IMG/VR virus record: IMGVR_UViG_3300042010_000106
Location: 186,001 to 250,000 of that record
Length of the DNA stretch: 64,000 bases
Direction: 5' to 3' (one strand)
The notes under the pieces are model-generated. The model was not told the DNA's origin, did no database searches, and was given only the letters and a program-made list of their open reading frames with translations. Each line of letters opens with the position of its first letter. Positions within the stretch are counted from its first letter, which is position 1. Positions 31,439-55,725 of this stretch are shown here, piece by piece. The position numbers and the translations under genes were made by a program.

Positions 31439-31515
31439 TCTAAACTTCCCTAGATCCGTGAGTGCGTGCCGAGCGGGCACACGCTGGCCGGGTCGTGTAG
31501 CTGACCAGCGGCGGC

Positions 31516-49386: not shown

Positions 49387-50739
49387 TTACAAGTTGTTGA
49401 GGTGGTCAATGACGGTTTGCATGCTGCCAGTTTCCAGCTCTACTTCACCGTTGTTTTCCAGACGGTACTTGTCGATTTCTTTTACGTTCGCAAACATTTC
49501 GCGACGGATAGTCAGACGCAGGTTGTAATCAACGTCACGCATGCCGACGCCGTTATCGTTGGGAACAACGCGAGACATAAGAATGACCAGCGCGCCATCG
49601 GTGATTTCCGAGGCTGTATCGTTCGGCAACTTCGCCGCAATTTCTTGCAGGATTTGCGCGAAACGTTCGGCGTGTTCATCAGCTTCACTTACCGCTGCTT
49701 CTGCAATCGCCGCATCAGGTGCACGTTCGCCGCCCATTGGTGCAACGCGGGCAGGTTCTTCGGTCACAACGGTTTCAACCGGTGTTTCGATTTCAACGGT
49801 TGGCGCCGCTACTTCGTCTTCAGTTGGGAACGCGTCCGGCTCTTCTTCTGCAAAGAAAGTGTCGGGTTCGTCTTCACTGAAAATTTGTTCAACTTCAGTT
49901 TTGGCCGGTGGCGCTTTGAATTCTTCGTACAATTCCAGAACGCGGTTAACAACCGACATCGGGAAATCACTCACGTCGTTGAATTCGACAAACGAATCGA
50001 ATTGTTCAACACCGGTTTCCAGCTTAACGCGAATGAACGCGACGGCTTCTTCGTCCTTACGCAGAACGTCGAGGTTTTCGAGCTGTTCAACGGTCAGCAT
50101 ATCTTCGTTGAACGGTTCGTCTTGAACAACGTCGCCGGTTGCATTCAAACCGGTATCTTCAGCTTCGAAGGTTTCCGGTTCTTCGTCGTCTTCTTCGACT
50201 TCAGGCGCCAGTTCGACAGGGCCGGTCGCATGGAAGCCTTGAGGGCCACCATTAGCAGGTGCTACAGGCTCGCTAGGGGCGATTGGTTGTTCAACCGGGG
50301 CCGGTGCATTGTCGGCGTTCGGAACGAGCGACAGCGGATGCACAGAAGCCGTGCGGCGTGGCTCTTCGTCTTCCACGGTGAACAGGGTTTCGATTGCCGA
50401 CATCGCCACGTCTTCAGACGCCAGATAAACGACGATCAAACCGGAATCTTCGTCATGCGCCACGTTTACGAAAATGCCGACGTACTGTTGCGTAATGTCA
50501 GCGGCAGCGCTGTAGGCGAATTCCAATTGTTCGGCGAACGAAATCAATTCGAACGTCGGCAATTCCAAACGGTACAGGTAAACCGTTTCGTCGGTGGTCA
50601 GATCCAGCAGCACTGGATCGAAACCCAACCATTGCAGAAGGTGTTCTGCTTTGGTGTCGAGGGCCTTTTGCATTTCGCTGAAAAAGAAAGCCTGCGCTTG
50701 GTTGTAAGTGCTGGCTTTCAAAGTCTCAATGTATTTCAT
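49387..50739 (-). CDS. acidic multidomain hypothetical protein
   Basis: 450 aa; E/D/P-rich linkers with EPETF/EPDTF/EPDAF motifs. Confidence 0.75.
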   Translation of the reverse strand: MKYIETLKASTYNQAQAFFFSEMQKALDTKAEHLLQWLGFDPVLLDLTTDETVYLYRLELPTFELISFAEQLEFAYSAAADITQQYVGIFVNVAHDEDSGLIVVYLASEDVAMSAIETLFTVEDEEPRRTASVHPLSLVPNADNAPAPVEQPIAPSEPVAPANGGPQGFHATGPVELAPEVEEDDEEPETFEAEDTGLNATGDVVQDEPFNEDMLTVEQLENLDVLRKDEEAVAFIRVKLETGVEQFDSFVEFNDVSDFPMSVVNRVLELYEEFKAPPAKTEVEQIFSEDEPDTFFAEEEPDAFPTEDEVAAPTVEIETPVETVVTEEPARVAPMGGERAPDAAIAEAAVSEADEHAERFAQILQEIAAKLPNDTASEITDGALVILMSRVVPNDNGVGMRDVDYNLRLTIRREMFANVKEIDKYRLENNGEVELETGSMQTVIDHLNNL

Positions 50740-50763
50740 TTCGGTAAGCCTCTAAATCGAATG

Positions 50764-50789
50764 AATAACGGCGGGGTTTAATCCGCCGT
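50764..50789 (-). terminator. possible terminator or attenuating hairpin
   Basis: ACGGCGG-loop-CCGCCGT followed by weak TATT. Confidence 0.4.
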
Positions 50790-50802
50790 ATTGCCGTTGG
50801 TC

Positions 50803-52644
50803 TTACTCGCCTTCTTGCACAGCAGCCAGAAGGGATTCCAGATTCACGCCAGCTTTTGCAACTGGTTTATCCATACCGACCAGCAGAGGCGAACCGTCTT
50901 TGTTCAGGCCGACCAGAATGTATTGCTTGTCTTCCATTGCAACGGTGTGGCCCGGTTCGATTTCGTAACCGATGATATCGAACACGTCTTGAGTTGCGTA
51001 CCACAGCTTAACGTAAGCGGTGATGTTGCGACCCGGCATCAGTTTTTCCAGACGGGCTTTTGCGTTTTCAACGAGTTCGGTAACGTCGAGCGGGAAAGTG
51101 GTTTCGGCTTCTTCTTCCTCTTCGAAAGATTCAGGCTCTTCCTCTTCTTCGTCTTCGTCGTCGAAGGTTTCCGGCTCTTCTTCTTCGTCGTCTTCGTCTT
51201 CTTCGTCGAAGGTTTCCGGCTCTTCTTCTTCGTCGCCTACTTCCGGCTCTTCCTCTTCTTCGTCTTCTTCCTGTTCCAGCAATTCATGCGATTCGAAATC
51301 CGCAGGCTTGCCAGTCGGCGCAACGTGACCTTGCGATTCTTGCAGTTTCGCAAAACCGTTTTCCAGCTCTTTTACTTTGCGTGCGATGTCGGCTTTGTTG
51401 GCGTCGGTCGCGGCGAAAGCGAAAGTAACGGTCATCATGTTGCTACCGTTCTGAGTTGCAGTCGCCGAAACCAGATCAATGTTATAGGCTTCTTGCAGAC
51501 CCATCAGAACGCATTCACGCAGGTGGTCTTTTACGTCCAGAGTGGTGTCGTAATCGAACGCGTCAACGTCCAGCTTTTTAACGGTTTGCGACGGCGCGGT
51601 ACGGTTGCGAGGAACAGCGGTGCCAGTGCGCGGCAAATCTTTACCGGTGTAAACGAAACCGGAACCGTCACGGGCGATTTCTTCAACGCTGCATTTGAAA
51701 CCGCGATCAGTTTCAACGGTGTTGTTTTTGAAAGTTTTGGTAACGGTGTGAGTTACCTTGCCGACTTTCAGCGCTTGGTTTTTCACTTCGTTACGGGACA
51801 CGGCAGCCGGTTTTTTCGCAGCAGCAGCTTTTGCGAGTGCAGCGGCGTGCAATTCTTCCAGCTCTTCGGCGTATTCGTCGGAGATTACAGCGAAGCCACC
51901 ACCGACCAGACTTTTGCGAACGTCTTCGATTTGGAATTCTTCACCGCTTTCAGTTACGCAGCGACCGGATTTGTAAGTGGTTTCAACGGTGAAATCTTCG
52001 CCGTCGATTGCAACGACTTTGCCGCGAATGTCTTTCGTGGTCAGCAGGCCGGGAGCGCTGAACAGGGTATCAACAGCATTTGCAGCGGTCGAAGCTTTTG
52101 CAGCCTTGGCAGGTTTTGCGGTCACGCCGCCTTTGGCAACAGCGCCACCTTTTGTAGCAGCAGCTTTTACAGCGCTTGCAGGAACGGCGGTTTTGTTGTC
52201 GGTGGTAACGAAGCCTTTGCCTTTACGAACGACGTTCGCCAGTTCGATACGTTGACCATCGGCCAGCACGACAATGCCTTTCGAACGGATTTGTTTTTCA
52301 ACGGCAACGCCGTTTACTTTTTTGCCGTCGAGTTCGTCAGCGGTAACAGCGGCGGCAGGTGCACGGCCAGCAGGAGCTTTTGCAGCAGGAGCAGCGGCAG
52401 CGGTTGCCTTCTTGCTGTTCTCGGCAGGAGCTTTTGCAGTTGCGCCTTTACCTGCAACGTCGATGAACAGACCTTTGCCGCGATTGTACAGATCAGCAGC
52501 CGGATATTCAGCGCCCGATTCGGTGCGGATGATCCCTTTGCTGGTCAGGTGTTTCACAATCACTTCTTGCACCTTGGTTTCTTTCGGGGTGCCTTTGCGG
52601 GAAATGATGTTCAGAGTACGGCCAGCGTGGTTAACAGTAGACAT
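50803..52644 (-). CDS. multidomain protein: four repeated beta modules, A/K-rich linkers, acidic tract
   Basis: Repeats KGIIRTESG..Y, KGIVVLADG..I, GRCVTESG..F, NTVETDRG each followed by G.GF; AGGAG RBS; strong codon bias suggests high expression. Confidence 0.8.
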   Translation of the reverse strand: MSTVNHAGRTLNIISRKGTPKETKVQEVIVKHLTSKGIIRTESGAEYPAADLYNRGKGLFIDVAGKGATAKAPAENSKKATAAAAPAAKAPAGRAPAAAVTADELDGKKVNGVAVEKQIRSKGIVVLADGQRIELANVVRKGKGFVTTDNKTAVPASAVKAAATKGGAVAKGGVTAKPAKAAKASTAANAVDTLFSAPGLLTTKDIRGKVVAIDGEDFTVETTYKSGRCVTESGEEFQIEDVRKSLVGGGFAVISDEYAEELEELHAAALAKAAAAKKPAAVSRNEVKNQALKVGKVTHTVTKTFKNNTVETDRGFKCSVEEIARDGSGFVYTGKDLPRTGTAVPRNRTAPSQTVKKLDVDAFDYDTTLDVKDHLRECVLMGLQEAYNIDLVSATATQNGSNMMTVTFAFAATDANKADIARKVKELENGFAKLQESQGHVAPTGKPADFESHELLEQEEDEEEEEPEVGDEEEEPETFDEEDEDDEEEEPETFDDEDEEEEEPESFEEEEEAETTFPLDVTELVENAKARLEKLMPGRNITAYVKLWYATQDVFDIIGYEIEPGHTVAMEDKQYILVGLNKDGSPLLVGMDKPVAKAGVNLESLLAAVQEGE

Positions 52645-52697
52645 GTGAATCTCCTAAACTTACCTAGAAATGTGAGTGCCTTTTAAATCGGGCATGG

Positions 52698-52930
52698 GTT
52701 TCGACGGTTCCAATCTATCAAACGGCTATTGAACAAGCAAGCGCTATTCAACGTAGGCAACCATTAACCATCTAATGGGCCTAACCATTTGAGCCAGTAG
52801 CATTGGAACGGGTAACGCTCATTGCTACGGCATCAACACTCAAGGGGTTCCGAGGCGCCTATATAGTGGGCTGTGAAACGAAACTTACCTTGATCCGTGA
52901 GCGTTACGCTTTAGGGTCGAAACGTTACGG
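52698..52930 (-). ncRNA. candidate structured ~230-nt leader RNA or ncRNA
   Basis: Nested helices 52698-52705/52916-52923, 52707-52714/52802-52809, 52812-52821/52898-52907 plus internal hairpins; begins just after a promoter. Confidence 0.55.
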
Positions 52931-52937
52931 ACGATTA

Positions 52938-52966
52938 AAGGTACAGCGGCACTCGGTATACGTCAA
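52938..52966 (-). promoter_or_regulatory. sigma70-type promoter
   Basis: TTGACG-N17-TACCTT on minus strand. Confidence 0.65.
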
Positions 52967-52979
52967 CGACTATTAGCCT

Positions 52980-53768
52980 TTATCGTTCACCCGCTGGCGA
53001 TACCCGGCGCATAAGGGCCTGTATAGCCATTGCATCGCGTTGGCGGGTATCCAGCATATTGCGCAGCGTCTTTGCCTGTTCAACCGTGAACACGTTAGGC
53101 GCGGCGTATTCCGTATGCAGTTGATCTAACGCAGGGCCAGCGTTCGCCACGGCTTCGGCGGCGTTGCAATCGTAGGTCACGCTAACGGACGGAGTAACGA
53201 CACAACGGCGGCTCGCCTTGCCTTTCATAATGCAGCAACCGCTTTCAATAACACTGCGCGGCGTTTTGACAAGGTTATAAAGGGAAATACGAATCAGGCG
53301 AATGGTGCCATCGGTCAAACACAGAACTGGAACGGCTACCATCATCGGCGGCACATTTTCAGAACGCGAAGACATCAAAGCTTTGAGGCTCAGGATTTCG
53401 CGGAACGGCGCAGCAATGGTTGGCTGCAATTCAGTTCCATGAATCATGATTTCGAGACGTGCAAAAACGCTGTCGAGTTCAGGCAGGAACATGAACGGTT
53501 CGGAGCGGATGTATTGCAGCGCGGGAGTTTTGCGTACCCGCATAAATGCAGGCAGCGTGGAATCTGTTTTTTGGTTGACTGGTGCAACCAAAACTTTTAC
53601 GTCGTCGAGTACGATGCGAACGCCCATTGCGAGCAGAACGTTTACAACGAAATTGTAGTTGGTGGTTCCCGAACTGTATTGCTCCAGCATATCCACGGCG
53701 CGAATCAGTTCATGTACGGTAAGCTTGCCGCTAAGAATTTGGCTAATGATTCCGCTAGCGTTGATCAT
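52980..53768 (-). CDS. hypothetical protein
   Basis: 262-aa ORF with AAGG RBS. Confidence 0.65.
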   Translation of the reverse strand: MINASGIISQILSGKLTVHELIRAVDMLEQYSSGTTNYNFVVNVLLAMGVRIVLDDVKVLVAPVNQKTDSTLPAFMRVRKTPALQYIRSEPFMFLPELDSVFARLEIMIHGTELQPTIAAPFREILSLKALMSSRSENVPPMMVAVPVLCLTDGTIRLIRISLYNLVKTPRSVIESGCCIMKGKASRRCVVTPSVSVTYDCNAAEAVANAGPALDQLHTEYAAPNVFTVEQAKTLRNMLDTRQRDAMAIQALMRRVSPAGER

Positions 53769-53787
53769 ATTTTTTCCCTTAGAAAGT

Positions 53788-53815
53788 AAAAAAGCGACCT
53801 ATCGCTAGGCCGCTT
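53788..53815 (-). terminator. rho-independent terminator
   Basis: AAGCGGCCT-loop-AGGTCGCTT then TTTT. Confidence 0.75.
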
Positions 53816-53840
53816 CTTGTGTAACGCGCCGAATTAAAGC

Positions 53841-54443
53841 TTAGGCTTTTTTAGCTTTCGGAGCTTTGGCAACCGGGGCAGCAGCAGGAGCGGCTTTCGG
53901 TGCTTTGGCTTTAGCGCCACCTTTCACAGCAGGTGCAGGAGCGGCAACAGCAGCAGCTTTCGGAGCTTTTGCTTTCGGTGCTTTGGCAACTGGTGCAGTT
54001 ACGGCAGCGGCTTTAGCAGCCTTCAGTTTTGGAGCGCCGGTTTTGGTAACGCCGACAGCAACAGGAGCAGCGGCAACTTTCGGAGCTTTGGCTGGCTTGG
54101 CAGCTTTTGCTTTTTCAGCGGCTTTTGCTTCTTTGGCTTTCAGAGCAGCAGCGGCGCGTTCTTCGCCTTGCAGTTTCTTCAGAGCGGCTTTGTCGTCGGC
54201 GATTTCAGCGGTCAGAACGGTGACGGCATTGGACAGGGTTTCAACGGCGGTTGCCGATGCTTTCTGAACGTTGGCGACAACTTTCGGAGCGGTAGCCAGA
54301 ACCAGTTTCGAATGCGCTTTCACGTGAGCGTTGGCAGCAGTCAGTTGTGCTTTCACGGTGGCGAGGGTAGCCACTTTGCCAGCGATGGTTTTGGTCAGAG
54401 CGGATTCGGCTTTGGACAGCTTTGGAGTGGTAACGGTGGTCAT
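53841..54443 (-). CDS. histone H1-like (AlgP-type architecture) K/A/P-rich protein
   Basis: N-terminal coiled coil then KAPKA/KAAKPAKAPK repeats. Confidence 0.75.
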   Translation of the reverse strand: MTTVTTPKLSKAESALTKTIAGKVATLATVKAQLTAANAHVKAHSKLVLATAPKVVANVQKASATAVETLSNAVTVLTAEIADDKAALKKLQGEERAAAALKAKEAKAAEKAKAAKPAKAPKVAAAPVAVGVTKTGAPKLKAAKAAAVTAPVAKAPKAKAPKAAAVAAPAPAVKGGAKAKAPKAAPAAAPVAKAPKAKKA

Positions 54444-54471
54444 CTTCTTTCTTCCTTCAGGGGTAGTGGCT

Positions 54472-55320
54472 TTAGTGCCGTTTGTAAGCTAATGCCCGTT
54501 GTTTGATTTCGGACAGTGCGTATTTGTTGCAAAGCTTTGTAAATTCTTTCACGTCTAACGGTGAAATTGACATGTCCAATTCTGACACGTCGTAGGCATC
54601 CAAAGCAAACGTTATCAGCTTTCGATTCAGCTTCAATCGCTGCTTTATATTTACAGTTTTCTGCGCGCCTTTCGGAAAGCGTTCTAATGGAATCTTTTCA
54701 GCCTTTCCAAACTCTTCGATCAGCTTAACTGCGGTTGTAGGCCCAATGCCGGGGATTCCGTCAATGCCATCGACTTTATCACCATCCAGCATTAGGAAGT
54801 CAACCATTCGTTTTGGTTCAACGAGGAATACTTCTTTACAGTTTTTACGCGTGATCGTGAGTTTCTTTTGCGGGTTAATCAAACGAATGTGTTTGTGCAC
54901 AAGGCATTGCGCAAAATCTTTATCCGTTGACAGGATATACGCACGGCCACCATCGTAATACACGGCAGCAGCCGCCACGATGTCATCCGCCTCAATCCCG
55001 CGAATGCCCACAACACAAATGCCCATCGCGATCAACATTTCCACGATGATTGGCGTTTGTATTTTCAGCGCGGCAGACTTTTCAGGATCTTTGATACGCC
55101 CGCCTTTGTAATCCGGGTGCAGTTTGTGCCTGAAATTGTTCGTGCCGGGGCGGTCGAAGGTCACAACACACTCTGTCGCTTTGGTATCGCGCAGATTCGC
55201 TAACAGGATTCCGAAAAATCCGTGAATAACGTTTGTCGGTGTGCCCTTGTGTGAGCTAGGCCGTACCGCGTGGTAGGCCCGGTGCATTGCGTTGGTGCCG
55301 TCAACTACAAGGCGAGTCAT
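54472..55320 (-). CDS. 5'-3' exonuclease / flap endonuclease (PolA N-terminal, T4 RNase H-like)
   Basis: VVDGTN, FD, YKGGR, EADD, STDKD, GDKVDGIDGIPGIGPTTA. Confidence 0.9.
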   Translation of the reverse strand: MTRLVVDGTNAMHRAYHAVRPSSHKGTPTNVIHGFFGILLANLRDTKATECVVTFDRPGTNNFRHKLHPDYKGGRIKDPEKSAALKIQTPIIVEMLIAMGICVVGIRGIEADDIVAAAAVYYDGGRAYILSTDKDFAQCLVHKHIRLINPQKKLTITRKNCKEVFLVEPKRMVDFLMLDGDKVDGIDGIPGIGPTTAVKLIEEFGKAEKIPLERFPKGAQKTVNIKQRLKLNRKLITFALDAYDVSELDMSISPLDVKEFTKLCNKYALSEIKQRALAYKRH

Positions 55321-55725
55321 TTAGTCATCCTTATAGACCCGCACAGGCGCGTTTTCGACTGCACGATTCAACAGGTCGTTTTCGTTTGAAATAAGCCGGA
55401 TGCCTGTACGCAAAATGCGGAACGTTTGAGCGCTTCGCAACAGGGCTAAAACCAGACGGTCTTTGACAAAAGGCACAGCCACATAGCCAACGCCTTCTGT
55501 AGTGGTTCCAATAATTGCTTTTCCACCGGACGTGATCGCCTTGTGTACTTCGCTAAGGTCTGCATTTTCTTTTGCGTAGATTGTCCAACGCTTGTACACC
55601 GTAAACGCTTTCGGCTCACGATCATTCAGCAACTTGACCAACAGCGATTGCGATCCCGGCTCAAATGTCACAGCCATCAAAAGCGTTTCGCCTTTTACTC
55701 GCTTATTCACAGATCCTTTCAGCAT
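55321..55725 (-). CDS. hypothetical protein
   Basis: 134-aa ORF coupled to exonuclease start. Confidence 0.6.
   Translation of the reverse strand: MLKGSVNKRVKGETLLMAVTFEPGSQSLLVKLLNDREPKAFTVYKRWTIYAKENADLSEVHKAITSGGKAIIGTTTEGVGYVAVPFVKDRLVLALLRSAQTFRILRTGIRLISNENDLLNRAVENAPVRVYKDD

What the first reader, a model, noticed from the sequence alone, without database searches (positions are those of the whole stretch)
52651..52966. Candidate structured RNA with its own promoter ahead of the 613-aa repeat protein
Seen: a ~335-nt intergenic gap in an otherwise packed genome. TTGACG-N17-TACCTT is followed directly by nested helices: GTTTCGAC 52698/GTCGAAAC 52916 (closing), GTTCCAAT 52707/ATTGGAAC 52802, and GTAACGCTCA 52812/TGAGCGTTAC 52898 extended by ACGG/CCGT and ATCAA/TTGAT; there is also a CCATTA/TAATGG hairpin near 52761. 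An alternative pairing (GTAGCA 52797 with TGCTAC 52823) hints at a switch. The 10-mer AAACTTACCT occurs both inside the structure (52881) and next to the RBS (52656). I do not recognise it as tRNA, tmRNA or a ribozyme. Inference: a new cis-regulatory leader (possible translational autoregulation) or a phage ncRNA.
Basis: partly seen in the sequence, partly recalled or inferred. Interest (0 to 1): 0.7.

Follow-up and report, generated by a model that had tools for sequence, protein, structure and literature searches.

The report
Structured leader with tandem early promoters
The 335-base gap ahead of a 613-aa jumbo-phage gene is a conserved control region: two tandem early-promoter units, the upstream one giving the mRNA a long folded 5' leader not found in any Rfam (RNA family) model, whose regulatory role is inferred, not shown.

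Summary

The window belongs to a 312-kb jumbo phage related to Pseudomonas phages Lu11 and HRDY3. The gap, with the same gene order around it, recurs in about 19 distinct relatives in 8 lineages.

Three helices are supported across lineages:
- a closing helix, P1;
- the base of a long hairpin, P2a;
- a helix in the third arm, P3c.

No Rfam family, tRNA, conserved ORF or terminator lies in the gap, so it is a 5' leader, not a separate small RNA.

Two points are new.
- The repeated 10-mer is part of a 20-nt module (CTCAC-N10-AAGTT, containing the ribosome-binding motif) that sits about 66 nt after a TTGAC -35 box. In 7 other places in this genome it lies 4-6 nt before a start codon.
- The gap holds two such units in tandem. 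The conserved "loop" motifs GCTTG and TTTGRTAG fit the -35 and extended -10 of a second, internal promoter.

The function (control of translation or mRNA stability) is inferred. There are no usable transcript data.

The parts
52938..52966 (-). Promoter 1: -35 TTGACG (52966..52961), 17-nt spacer, -10 TACCTT (52943..52938); predicted start near 52932
   Evidence: Sequence. TTG(A/C)C-17-TAnnnT is conserved in 18 relatives, with a -35-to-module distance of 66-69 nt. Other early genes of this genome have the same layout. It falls below the threshold of the simple consensus scan.
52916..52923 (-). P1, 5' strand (GUUUCGAC) of the closing helix
   Evidence: Pairs with 52698..52705. L014 has GUUUCGAG/CUCGAAAC, a compensatory change. 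Other lineages pair different sequences at the same place. Cognate versus non-cognate duplex energy: -16.6 versus -13.4 kcal/mol; 10 of 20000 permutations were as good.
52882..52901 (-). Module 1: CTCACGGATCAAGGTAAGTT, the first copy of the shared early-leader module; no start codon follows it
   Evidence: Nine copies in the 312-kb genome, 7 of them 4-6 nt before an ATG. Nearly invariant across the 18 leaders. Also present in Lu11 and HRDY3.
52898..52907 (-). P2a, 5' strand (GUAACGCUCA); overlaps the CUCA of module 1
   Evidence: Pairs with 52812..52821. On the covariance-model alignment of 23 loci, 79% of cells are paired, against 27-44% when the partner is slid. One pair is G-C in 13 sequences and A-U in 4; another is C-G in 18 and U-A in 1.
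52857..52871 (-). Apical hairpin H of P2: GCC, loop CACUAUAUA, GGC (TATATAGGC occurs once in the genome)
   Evidence: ATAGG is invariant in 9 aligned leaders. The stem is seen in most single-sequence folds. Its flanks show no significant covariation (3563 of 20000 permutations as good).
52812..52821 (-). P2a, 3' strand (UGAGCGUUAC)
   Evidence: As for the P2a 5' strand.
52794..52830 (-). Alternative hairpin: CCGUAGCA (52830..52823) with UGCUAC-U-GG (52802..52794); it crosses P2a and P3a, so it excludes them
   Evidence: L014 and L018 have CCGAAGCA/UGCUU-UC-CGG (U-A changed to A-U). L005 has a shifted GCAUU/AAUGC. Enforcing the helix costs 1.8 (window), 0.0 (L004), 2.3 (L014) and 4.2 (L005) kcal/mol.
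52802..52809 (-). P3a, 5' strand (GUUCCAAU)
   Evidence: Pairs with 52707..52714. L014 has GUUUCAAU/AUUGAAAC, a compensatory C-G to U-A change (sequences; the automatic alignment puts L014 out of register here and scores these pairs as broken).
52785..52792 (-). P3c, 5' strand (UCAAAUGG)
   Evidence: Pairs with 52718..52725. Each lineage has its own complementary pair (L014 11 bp, L005 9 bp, lineage C GGGAAGCC/GGCUUUCCC). Cognate -15.7 versus non-cognate -11.75 kcal/mol; 1 of 20000 permutations as good.
52712..52740 (-). Candidate internal promoter 2: -35 TTGCTT (52740..52735), 17 nt, TG-extended -10 TAGATT (52717..52712); its spacer is the 3' strand of P3c (52718..52725)
   Evidence: TTGnnn-17/18-TA(G/A)nnT is kept in lineages A, A', B, C, E and F, 63-67 nt before module 2. 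It is absent in lineage D and in Lu11. The consensus scan flags it in L007: TTGACG-17-TAGATT, 9 of 12 matches, TG present.
52698..52714 (-). 3' strands of P3a (AUUGGAAC, 52714..52707) and P1 (GUCGAAAC, 52705..52698); the predicted start of promoter 2 falls here
52677..52694 (-). Small hairpin UGCC-N10-GGCA directly before module 2
   Evidence: Predicted in the consensus fold. L075 has UGUC...GACA, one compensatory change.
52657..52676 (-). Module 2: CTCACATTTCTAGGTAAGTT, the second copy, next to the real ribosome-binding site
   Evidence: CTCAC-N10-AAGTT spacing is kept in most lineages.
52642..52655 (-). Shine-Dalgarno AGGAG (52655..52651) and ATG (52644..52642) of the 613-aa gene
   Evidence: M1 is invariant in homologs. 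The site is about 50% unpaired in partition-function folds of all 18 leaders.
50803..52644 (-). 613-aa gene (P0001): four small beta-barrel repeats, an alpha/beta middle domain, an acidic disordered stretch (439-515) and a C-terminal domain; function unknown
50768..50789 (-). Terminator-like hairpin just after the 613-aa stop codon
   Evidence: 7 pairs, 6 of them G-C; weak T-run.

Best explanation
The gap is the control region of an early, monocistronic gene of a Lu11-like jumbo Pseudomonas phage. It consists of two tandem copies of the phage family's 'early unit': a sigma-70-type promoter, about 30 nt, then the 20-nt module CUCAC-N10-AAGUU that normally carries the ribosome-binding motif.

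The upstream promoter yields an mRNA with a leader of about 290 nt. That leader folds into a three-way junction:
- P1 pairs the 5' end with the segment about 20 nt before module 2, which directly precedes the true ribosome-binding site.
- P2 is a long irregular hairpin whose 5' strand is the first, start-codon-less copy of the module.
- P3 is a variable arm. Its 3' half also encodes the internal promoter, which would give a short leader of the ordinary type.

Shown: conservation, covariation in P1, P2a and P3c, absence of an ORF or terminator, and the module's distribution.

Inferred: the long leader acts in cis on the stability and/or translation of the 613-aa mRNA. A paired 5' end would protect the transcript, the ribosome-binding site stays open, and a near-isoenergetic alternative hairpin would free module 1. 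The two promoters would then give two differently controlled mRNA forms.
For: - The gap and the gene order are conserved in all homologous loci found.
- Conserved blocks persist although the downstream proteins are only 30-40% identical.
- Covariance model R1 (module 1, P2a and hairpin H) finds all 23 loci at E < 1e-7, and finds one full copy in the phage's own genome.
- P2a: 79% of cells paired versus 27-44% with the partner slid, with G-C to A-U and C-G to U-A exchanges.
- Lineage A/A' consensus fold: 77 pairs, 13 with compensatory changes, 94.7% paired versus 29-42% slid.
- Lineage-specific complementarity: 10 of 20000 permutations as good for P1, 1 of 20000 for P3c.
- MFE z-scores are negative in all 13 leaders tested.
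- No conserved ORF, no terminator between promoter and ATG, no Rfam or tRNA hit.
- Module distribution.
- Internal promoter.
- Alternative hairpin.
Against: - No transcript evidence. The only RNA-labelled run gives low-depth contigs over the 613-aa and 450-aa genes and none over the leader.
- Folding z-scores are modest, and weak in some lineages (-0.8 to -1.2 in L015, L009, L013 and Lu11).
- There are only about 8 lineages. Many helices do not vary, and the permutation tests are not corrected for relatedness.
- The architecture is not identical everywhere. Lineages C, D and F use UUUGCCG/CGGCAAA and place the closing helix elsewhere, and lineage D lacks most of P3.
- Part of the conservation is explained by the internal promoter rather than by RNA.
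- Pairing of the module's ribosome-binding-like core inside P2 is not better than shuffles (mean z -0.74).
- Blocking module 1 in silico does not change access to the true ribosome-binding site.
Confidence: 0.55

Rival explanations
1. Promoter 1 makes a separate small RNA of about 190-220 nt (P2 plus most of P3). It ends at the G+C-rich P3c stem and the U-rich UUUGAUAGAUU tract. The gene is expressed from the internal promoter. The small RNA would display module 1 as a decoy acting in trans.
For: The internal promoter is placed like the promoters of ordinary early units. The 3' strand of P3c is followed by a U-rich stretch in lineages A', C and E. In HRDY3 another module is followed at once by a perfect hairpin and a U-rich tail.
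Against: No terminator passes the scan in the window, L006 or L007. In lineage A the stem encloses about 60 nt with two hairpins. P1 and P3a need sequence downstream of the U-rich tract, and P1 co-varies. Lineage D and Lu11 lack the internal promoter yet keep P1 and P2.
Confidence: 0.15
2. The conservation is a DNA-level signal only: two tandem promoters plus factor-binding sites (the modules lie at a fixed distance from each promoter). The RNA helices are incidental.
For: Both modules lie 63-69 nt from a -35 box. The GCTTG and TTTGRTAG blocks fit -35 and extended -10 elements. Module conservation does not depend on a following ATG. Folding z-scores are modest.
Against: Promoter spacers and the initial transcribed sequence change between lineages while staying complementary to distant partners. 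P2a shows compensatory exchanges. Lineage D and Lu11 keep P1 and P2 without promoter 2.
Confidence: 0.12
3. The leader is the operator for translational autoregulation by the 613-aa protein, in the manner of the phage T4 gene 32 leader.
For: Leader and gene always occur together. The protein has four tandem small beta-barrels with weak Tudor/PRC-barrel-like fold matches, and an acidic region. The gene sits in a replication-gene neighbourhood.
Against: No RNA- or DNA-binding family was recognised. PDB fold matches are all at E > 0.1. The module is shared with unrelated early genes, so it is not specific to this mRNA.
Confidence: 0.1
4. The leader is a ligand- or temperature-sensing switch that toggles between the three-way junction and the alternative hairpin.
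For: The two folds are within 0-2.3 kcal/mol in lineages A and A', and the alternative helix has one compensatory change.
Against: No riboswitch family matches even at E = 10. No terminator was found, and neither fold sequesters the ribosome-binding site. The alternative helix is not clearly kept in lineages C to G.
Confidence: 0.06

Closest known systems
Phage T7 early region: tandem promoters A1-A3 followed by the RNase III site R0.3 ahead of gene 0.3 (from my own knowledge; not tested here)
   Same: Host-polymerase early promoters in tandem, then a long irregular hairpin in the untranslated leader of an early gene.
   Different: RNase III cleavage could not be tested. Here one promoter lies inside the folded leader, and the leader contains a copy of the gene's own ribosome-binding module.
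Phage lambda N leader: about 220 nt, with nutL and an RNase III-sensitive hairpin next to the N ribosome-binding site (from my own knowledge)
   Same: A long structured leader on an early phage gene, thought to tune translation.
   Different: No sequence or Rfam similarity. No boxA/boxB-like element was identified. The architecture is a three-way junction.
5' UTR stabilisers such as the E. coli ompA leader, and the phage T4 gene 32 autoregulatory leader (from my own knowledge)
   Same: A base-paired 5' end next to an open ribosome-binding site, acting in cis on one gene.
   Different: This leader is much longer, has three arms, carries an embedded promoter and a duplicated module, and no binding protein is known.
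CsrA/Rsm target sites: consensus (A/U)CANGGANG(U/A), and the SELEX consensus RUACARGGAUGU, as cited in PMC6849547
   Same: Module 1 reads UCACGGAUCA in the window and UCACGGAUCU in several other early units of this genome, which matches 9 of 10 consensus positions. In the other early units, and in lineages C and D, a second GGA lies in the adjacent AAGGRAAG motif; the window's own module 1 (AAGGUAAG) has none there. The related cultured phages infect Pseudomonas, which has RsmA, RsmE and RsmI.
   Different: The first GGA is missing in lineages E and F. In P2 it is not presented in a hairpin loop. GGA is not enriched in the leader. The phage encodes no CsrA. This is a lead only.

Membership tests
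Any Rfam 15 family (riboswitches, ribozymes, group I/II introns, phage RNAs) | Covariance-model score at or above the family's gathering threshold | tested here: not met
   No match in the 64-kb window at gathering thresholds. No match at E <= 10 on 52500-53100 with permissive filters.
tRNA / tmRNA | Cloverleaf or tmRNA detected by ARAGORN | tested here: not met
   No genes found in the window.
Sigma-70-type promoter (promoter 1) | -35 and -10 hexamers 16-18 nt apart, close to consensus | tested here: inconclusive
   TTGACG-17-TACCTT has 8 of 12 matches and is not listed by the scan. It is conserved in 18 relatives and has the same layout as six other early genes of this genome.
Sigma-70-type promoter (internal promoter 2) | -35 and -10 hexamers 16-18 nt apart, with TG-extended -10 | tested here: inconclusive
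   The window has TTGCTT-17-TAGATT with TG. The layout is conserved in 6 of 8 lineages. It passes the scan in L007 with 9 of 12 matches and TG. No start-site data exist.
Independent small RNA gene | Own promoter and own intrinsic terminator | tested here: not met
   A promoter is present, but no terminator-like site lies on the coding strand between 52979 and 52645. The same holds in L006 and L007.
Protein-coding leader (small ORF) | An ORF conserved in frame and length across relatives | tested here: not met
   ORFs of 25 aa or more differ in strand, frame and sequence among 10 leaders. The annotated Lu11_0153A lies across the promoter.
Translation-controlling riboswitch or thermosensor | An alternative fold that sequesters the Shine-Dalgarno sequence or start codon | tested here: not met
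   The ribosome-binding site is about 0.4-0.6 unpaired in all 18 leaders, and this does not change when module 1 is blocked. The alternative hairpin does not touch it.
CsrA/Rsm binding site | A GGA core within (A/U)CANGGANG(U/A), ideally in a hairpin loop, with at least two sites | tested here: inconclusive
   9 of 10 consensus positions match in module 1 of lineages A-D and Lu11. GGA is absent in lineages E and F. It is not in a loop.
RNase III processing site | Cleavage of an irregular hairpin of about 20 bp or more by RNase III | not testable with these tools
   P2 has about 25-30 predicted pairs with internal loops. No cleavage data exist.
Transcription-primed replication origin (as in phage T7 or T4) | Promoter(s) followed by an A+T-rich unwinding element; a shift in skew | tested here: not met
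   G+C is 43-51% across the gap, against 48.7% for the genome. The cumulative GC-skew extremes are at about 5 kb and 145 kb, not at 238.8 kb.

The most novel reading that the evidence does not exclude
The leader is a bistable RNA (three-way junction versus alternative hairpin). Its buried copy of the early-gene module would serve as a regulated decoy for a trans-acting factor, either a host Rsm/CsrA-type protein or a phage protein, that recognises the same module on all early mRNAs. Expression of the 613-aa protein would then be coupled to control of the whole early gene set by a 'sponge' built into an mRNA.
Probability: 0.12. Interest if true: 0.75.

Novelty: new member of a known kind. Interest (0 to 1): 0.45.

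Why it matters
- Regulatory RNAs of jumbo phages are almost unknown. This is a candidate new structured leader family with comparative support.
- It has a cultivable representative (Lu11 on Pseudomonas putida), so it can be tested directly.
- The shared 20-nt early-leader module and its tandem duplication point to a common control step for early genes in this phage group.
- It also shows that blocks which look like conserved RNA loops can be embedded promoters.

Tried and rejected
- **Rfam and ARAGORN:** Rfam at gathering thresholds and at E <= 10, and ARAGORN, found nothing.
- **DNA similarity to GenBank phages:** none.
- **RNAalifold on MAFFT alignments of all lineages:** failed because the variable arms misalign. 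I therefore used lineage-level folds, a covariance model and cognate/non-cognate duplex tests.
- **Simple anti-anti-Shine-Dalgarno switch:** not supported.
- **Specific sequestration of the module's AAGG core by the 3' arm of P2:** not better than shuffles.
- **Covariation around hairpin H:** not significant.
- **Group I intron or excised insert between the two module copies:** no Rfam intron match, and no evidence for splicing.
- **TATATAGGC as a phage-polymerase promoter:** it occurs only once in the genome.
- **Small ORF in the leader:** none conserved.
- **Transcript evidence:** two read-laying runs were uninformative.
- **Further relatives:** profile-based locus searches could not run, and extra pattern scans gave no new lineage.
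- **Protein function:** Pfam, PHROGs, PDB by sequence, Foldseek against PDB and AFDB gave only generic small beta-barrel resemblance.
- **Phage-encoded CsrA:** none.
- **Replication origin:** no skew or A+T signal.

Full report
**Where the feature lies.** The window is bases 186001-250000 of a 312,325-bp virus record with direct terminal repeats and 48.7% G+C. All genes near the finding are on the minus strand. The gap 52645..52979 separates a 262-aa ORF from the 613-aa ORF P0001. By protein similarity the nearest named phages are Pseudomonas phage HRDY3 (313.7 kb) and Pseudomonas phage Lu11 (280.5 kb, host P. putida).

**Check of the observation.** Every helix, the TTGACG-17-TACCTT site and both copies of AAACTTACCT are at the stated coordinates. 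Folding is moderately better than chance:
- z = -2.34 for the whole gap;
- z = -2.53 for the predicted transcript;
- z from -0.8 to -4.0 (mean -2.07) for 13 homologous leaders.

Rfam gives nothing at gathering thresholds or at E <= 10, and ARAGORN gives nothing.

**Conservation.**
- Homologs of P0001 (30-98% identity) were traced to contigs. In each contig that extends far enough, the gene order is the same: 5'-3' exonuclease, 200 aa, 262 aa, gap, 613 aa, 450 aa, 147 aa, 80 aa, 428 aa. The gap is 222-469 nt.
- Pattern scans added more loci, and Lu11 and HRDY3 were added.
- In all there are about 19 distinct leaders in 8 lineages: A (window, L002, L042, L004), A' (L014, L018 with L075), B (L005), C (L006, L015, L023, L008, HRDY3), D (L009, L011, L013 and others), E (L007, L012), F (L010, L054) and Lu11.
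- Blocks of the gap are nearly invariant although the flanking proteins are far diverged.
- No ORF is conserved in it. Lu11_0153A, annotated across the promoter, is probably spurious.

**The repeated 10-mer is part of a shared module.**
- CTCAC-N10-AAGTT occurs 9 times in the 312-kb genome, always on the local coding strand. Seven copies lie 4-6 nt before an ATG.
- Those seven precede other genes, five of which encode proteins under 120 aa; six of the seven have TTGAC 66-70 nt upstream.
- Lu11 has 2 copies and HRDY3 has 5.
- The module contains the ribosome-binding motif AAGGRAAG.
- The finding's gap holds two copies: module 1 (52901..52882), 66 nt after the -35 box and not followed by a start codon, and module 2 (52676..52657), next to AGGAG and the ATG.

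**A second promoter inside the 'structure'.**
- The conserved motifs GCTTG and TTTGRTAG, which look like loops in the fold, are spaced as a -35 box and a TG-extended -10 box. In the window this reads TTGCTT (52740..52735), 17 nt, TAGATT (52717..52712).
- The arrangement TTGnnn-17/18-TA(G/A)nnT is kept in lineages A, A', B, C, E and F. It lies 63-67 nt before module 2, mirroring the 66-69 nt of promoter 1. It is missing in lineage D and Lu11.
- In L007 the consensus scan lists it independently: TTGACG-17-TAGATT, 9 of 12 matches, TG present.
- The gap is therefore two tandem early units. No start-site data exist, so promoter 2 remains a candidate.

**RNA structure.** Single-sequence and lineage-level consensus folds agree on a three-way junction.
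- **P1** joins the 5' end (GUUUCGAC) to GUCGAAAC, about 20 nt before module 2. L014 and lineage E have GUUUCGAG/CUCGAAAC. Lineages C, F and Lu11 pair quite different sequences at the same places. Duplex energies of cognate 5' and 3' windows beat non-cognate combinations: -16.6 versus -13.4 kcal/mol, with 10 of 20000 permutations as good.
- **P2a** (GUAACGCUCA/UGAGCGUUAC) includes the CUCA of module 1. On an alignment made with covariance model R1, 79% of cells are paired, against 27-44% with slid partners. There are G-C to A-U (4 sequences) and C-G to U-A exchanges. R1 finds all 23 loci at E < 1e-7, and only one full copy in the phage's own genome.
- **P3a** (GUUCCAAU/AUUGGAAC) becomes GUUUCAAU/AUUGAAAC in L014 (sequences).
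- **P3c** has as its 3' strand the spacer of promoter 2, and it is complementary in a lineage-specific way: -15.7 versus -11.75 kcal/mol, with 1 of 20000 permutations as good.
- **Lineage A/A' consensus:** 77 pairs, 13 with compensatory changes, 94.7% paired versus 29-42% slid.

The weak points are these:
- The upper part of P2 shows no significant covariation.
- Pairing of the module's AAGG core with CCUU is not better than shuffles.
- Lineage D lacks most of P3.
- Lineages C, D and F place some helices differently.

**The alternative pairing.** CCGUAGCA (52830..52823) can pair with UGCUAC-U-GG (52802..52794). This crosses P2a and P3a, so it excludes them. L014 and L018 carry CCGAAGCA/UGCUU-UC-CGG, one compensatory exchange. 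Enforcing the helix costs 0-2.3 kcal/mol in lineages A and A' and 4.2 in B. In L004 it is part of the minimum-energy fold. A conformational switch is therefore possible but unproven.

**Leader or separate RNA.** No terminator-like site lies between the promoter and the ATG, in the window or in L006 and L007. One follows the 613-aa stop codon (50789..50768). P1 and P3a need sequence beyond the internal promoter. The true ribosome-binding site is about half unpaired in all leaders, and this is unaffected by blocking module 1 in silico. The best reading is a long cis-acting leader on the promoter-1 transcript, alongside a short ordinary leader from promoter 2.

**Transcript data.** One RNA-labelled run holds low-depth contigs over the 613-aa and 450-aa genes but not over the leader or the upstream genes. 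Another run of unknown kind holds one 151-nt piece across the promoter. This neither supports nor refutes transcription from either promoter.

**The downstream protein.** The AlphaFold2 model (mean pLDDT 67) shows four small beta-barrel repeats, an alpha/beta domain, an acidic disordered stretch (439-515) and a C-terminal domain. Fold matches are weak and generic: Tudor and PRC-barrel in AFDB, and nothing at E <= 0.001 in PDB. Pfam, PHROGs and PDB sequence searches are empty. Autoregulation therefore has no support beyond co-occurrence.

**A lead on the module.** UCACGGAUCU matches 9 of 10 positions of the Rsm/CsrA consensus cited in PMC6849547. The phage encodes no CsrA. The GGA is absent in lineages E and F, so this stays a lead.

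**Verdict.** This is a real, conserved, structured 5' leader not present in Rfam. It is built on a tandem duplication of the phage's early promoter-plus-module unit, with a probable internal promoter. The mechanism is inferred.

Noticed in passing
G000 41.9-55.2 kb and 105.8 kb (outside the window); window 31443..31462 (minus strand): Seven other genes, five of them encoding proteins under 120 aa, carry the CTCAC-N10-AAGTT module 4-6 nt before their ATG. Six of them have TTGAC 66-70 nt upstream. Four of their leaders share CCAGATCGGCAATTATGCC, a hairpin with apparent covariation (GGCA/TGCC versus GGCG/CGCC).
   Followed up: partly
L081 (HRDY3, PQ015379 around 282.1 kb): A module copy is followed at once by its perfect complement (AAGGGAAGT-TTAGG-ACTTCCCTT) and a T-rich tail. 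The gene's own GAGGA ribosome-binding site and ATG come about 40 nt later. This is a smaller case of a start-codon-less, hairpin-buried module.
   Followed up: partly
L078 (Lu11, JQ768459 around 134.3 kb): A module copy is followed by more than 250 nt without an obvious ORF. This may be a second long leader or a non-coding RNA in Lu11.
   Followed up: no
L071 2117-2323 (Lu11_0153A): The annotated 68-aa ORF lies across the conserved promoter and the 5' leader and has no counterpart in relatives. It is probably a spurious gene call.
   Followed up: partly
L010/L054 leaders (lineage F): A third module copy (CTCACGACATAAGGGAAGTTT) lies inside the P3 arm, just before the internal -35 box.
   Followed up: no
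window 51170-51280: The acidic Glu/Asp-rich coding stretch of the 613-aa gene attracts unrelated contigs from every run laid on it. This produces depth spikes and false joints.
   Followed up: no
window 50000-52450 versus 52576-55500: In the one RNA-labelled run, contigs cover the 613-aa and 450-aa genes but none of the three genes upstream of the gap. This would fit a promoter in the gap, but the depth (2-5) is too low to conclude.
   Followed up: partly
window 49387-50739 (450-aa ORF): The gene at the equivalent position in Lu11 (Lu11_0155) is annotated 'putative polyphosphate kinase'. Pfam and PHROGs find nothing for the window's copy.
   Followed up: no
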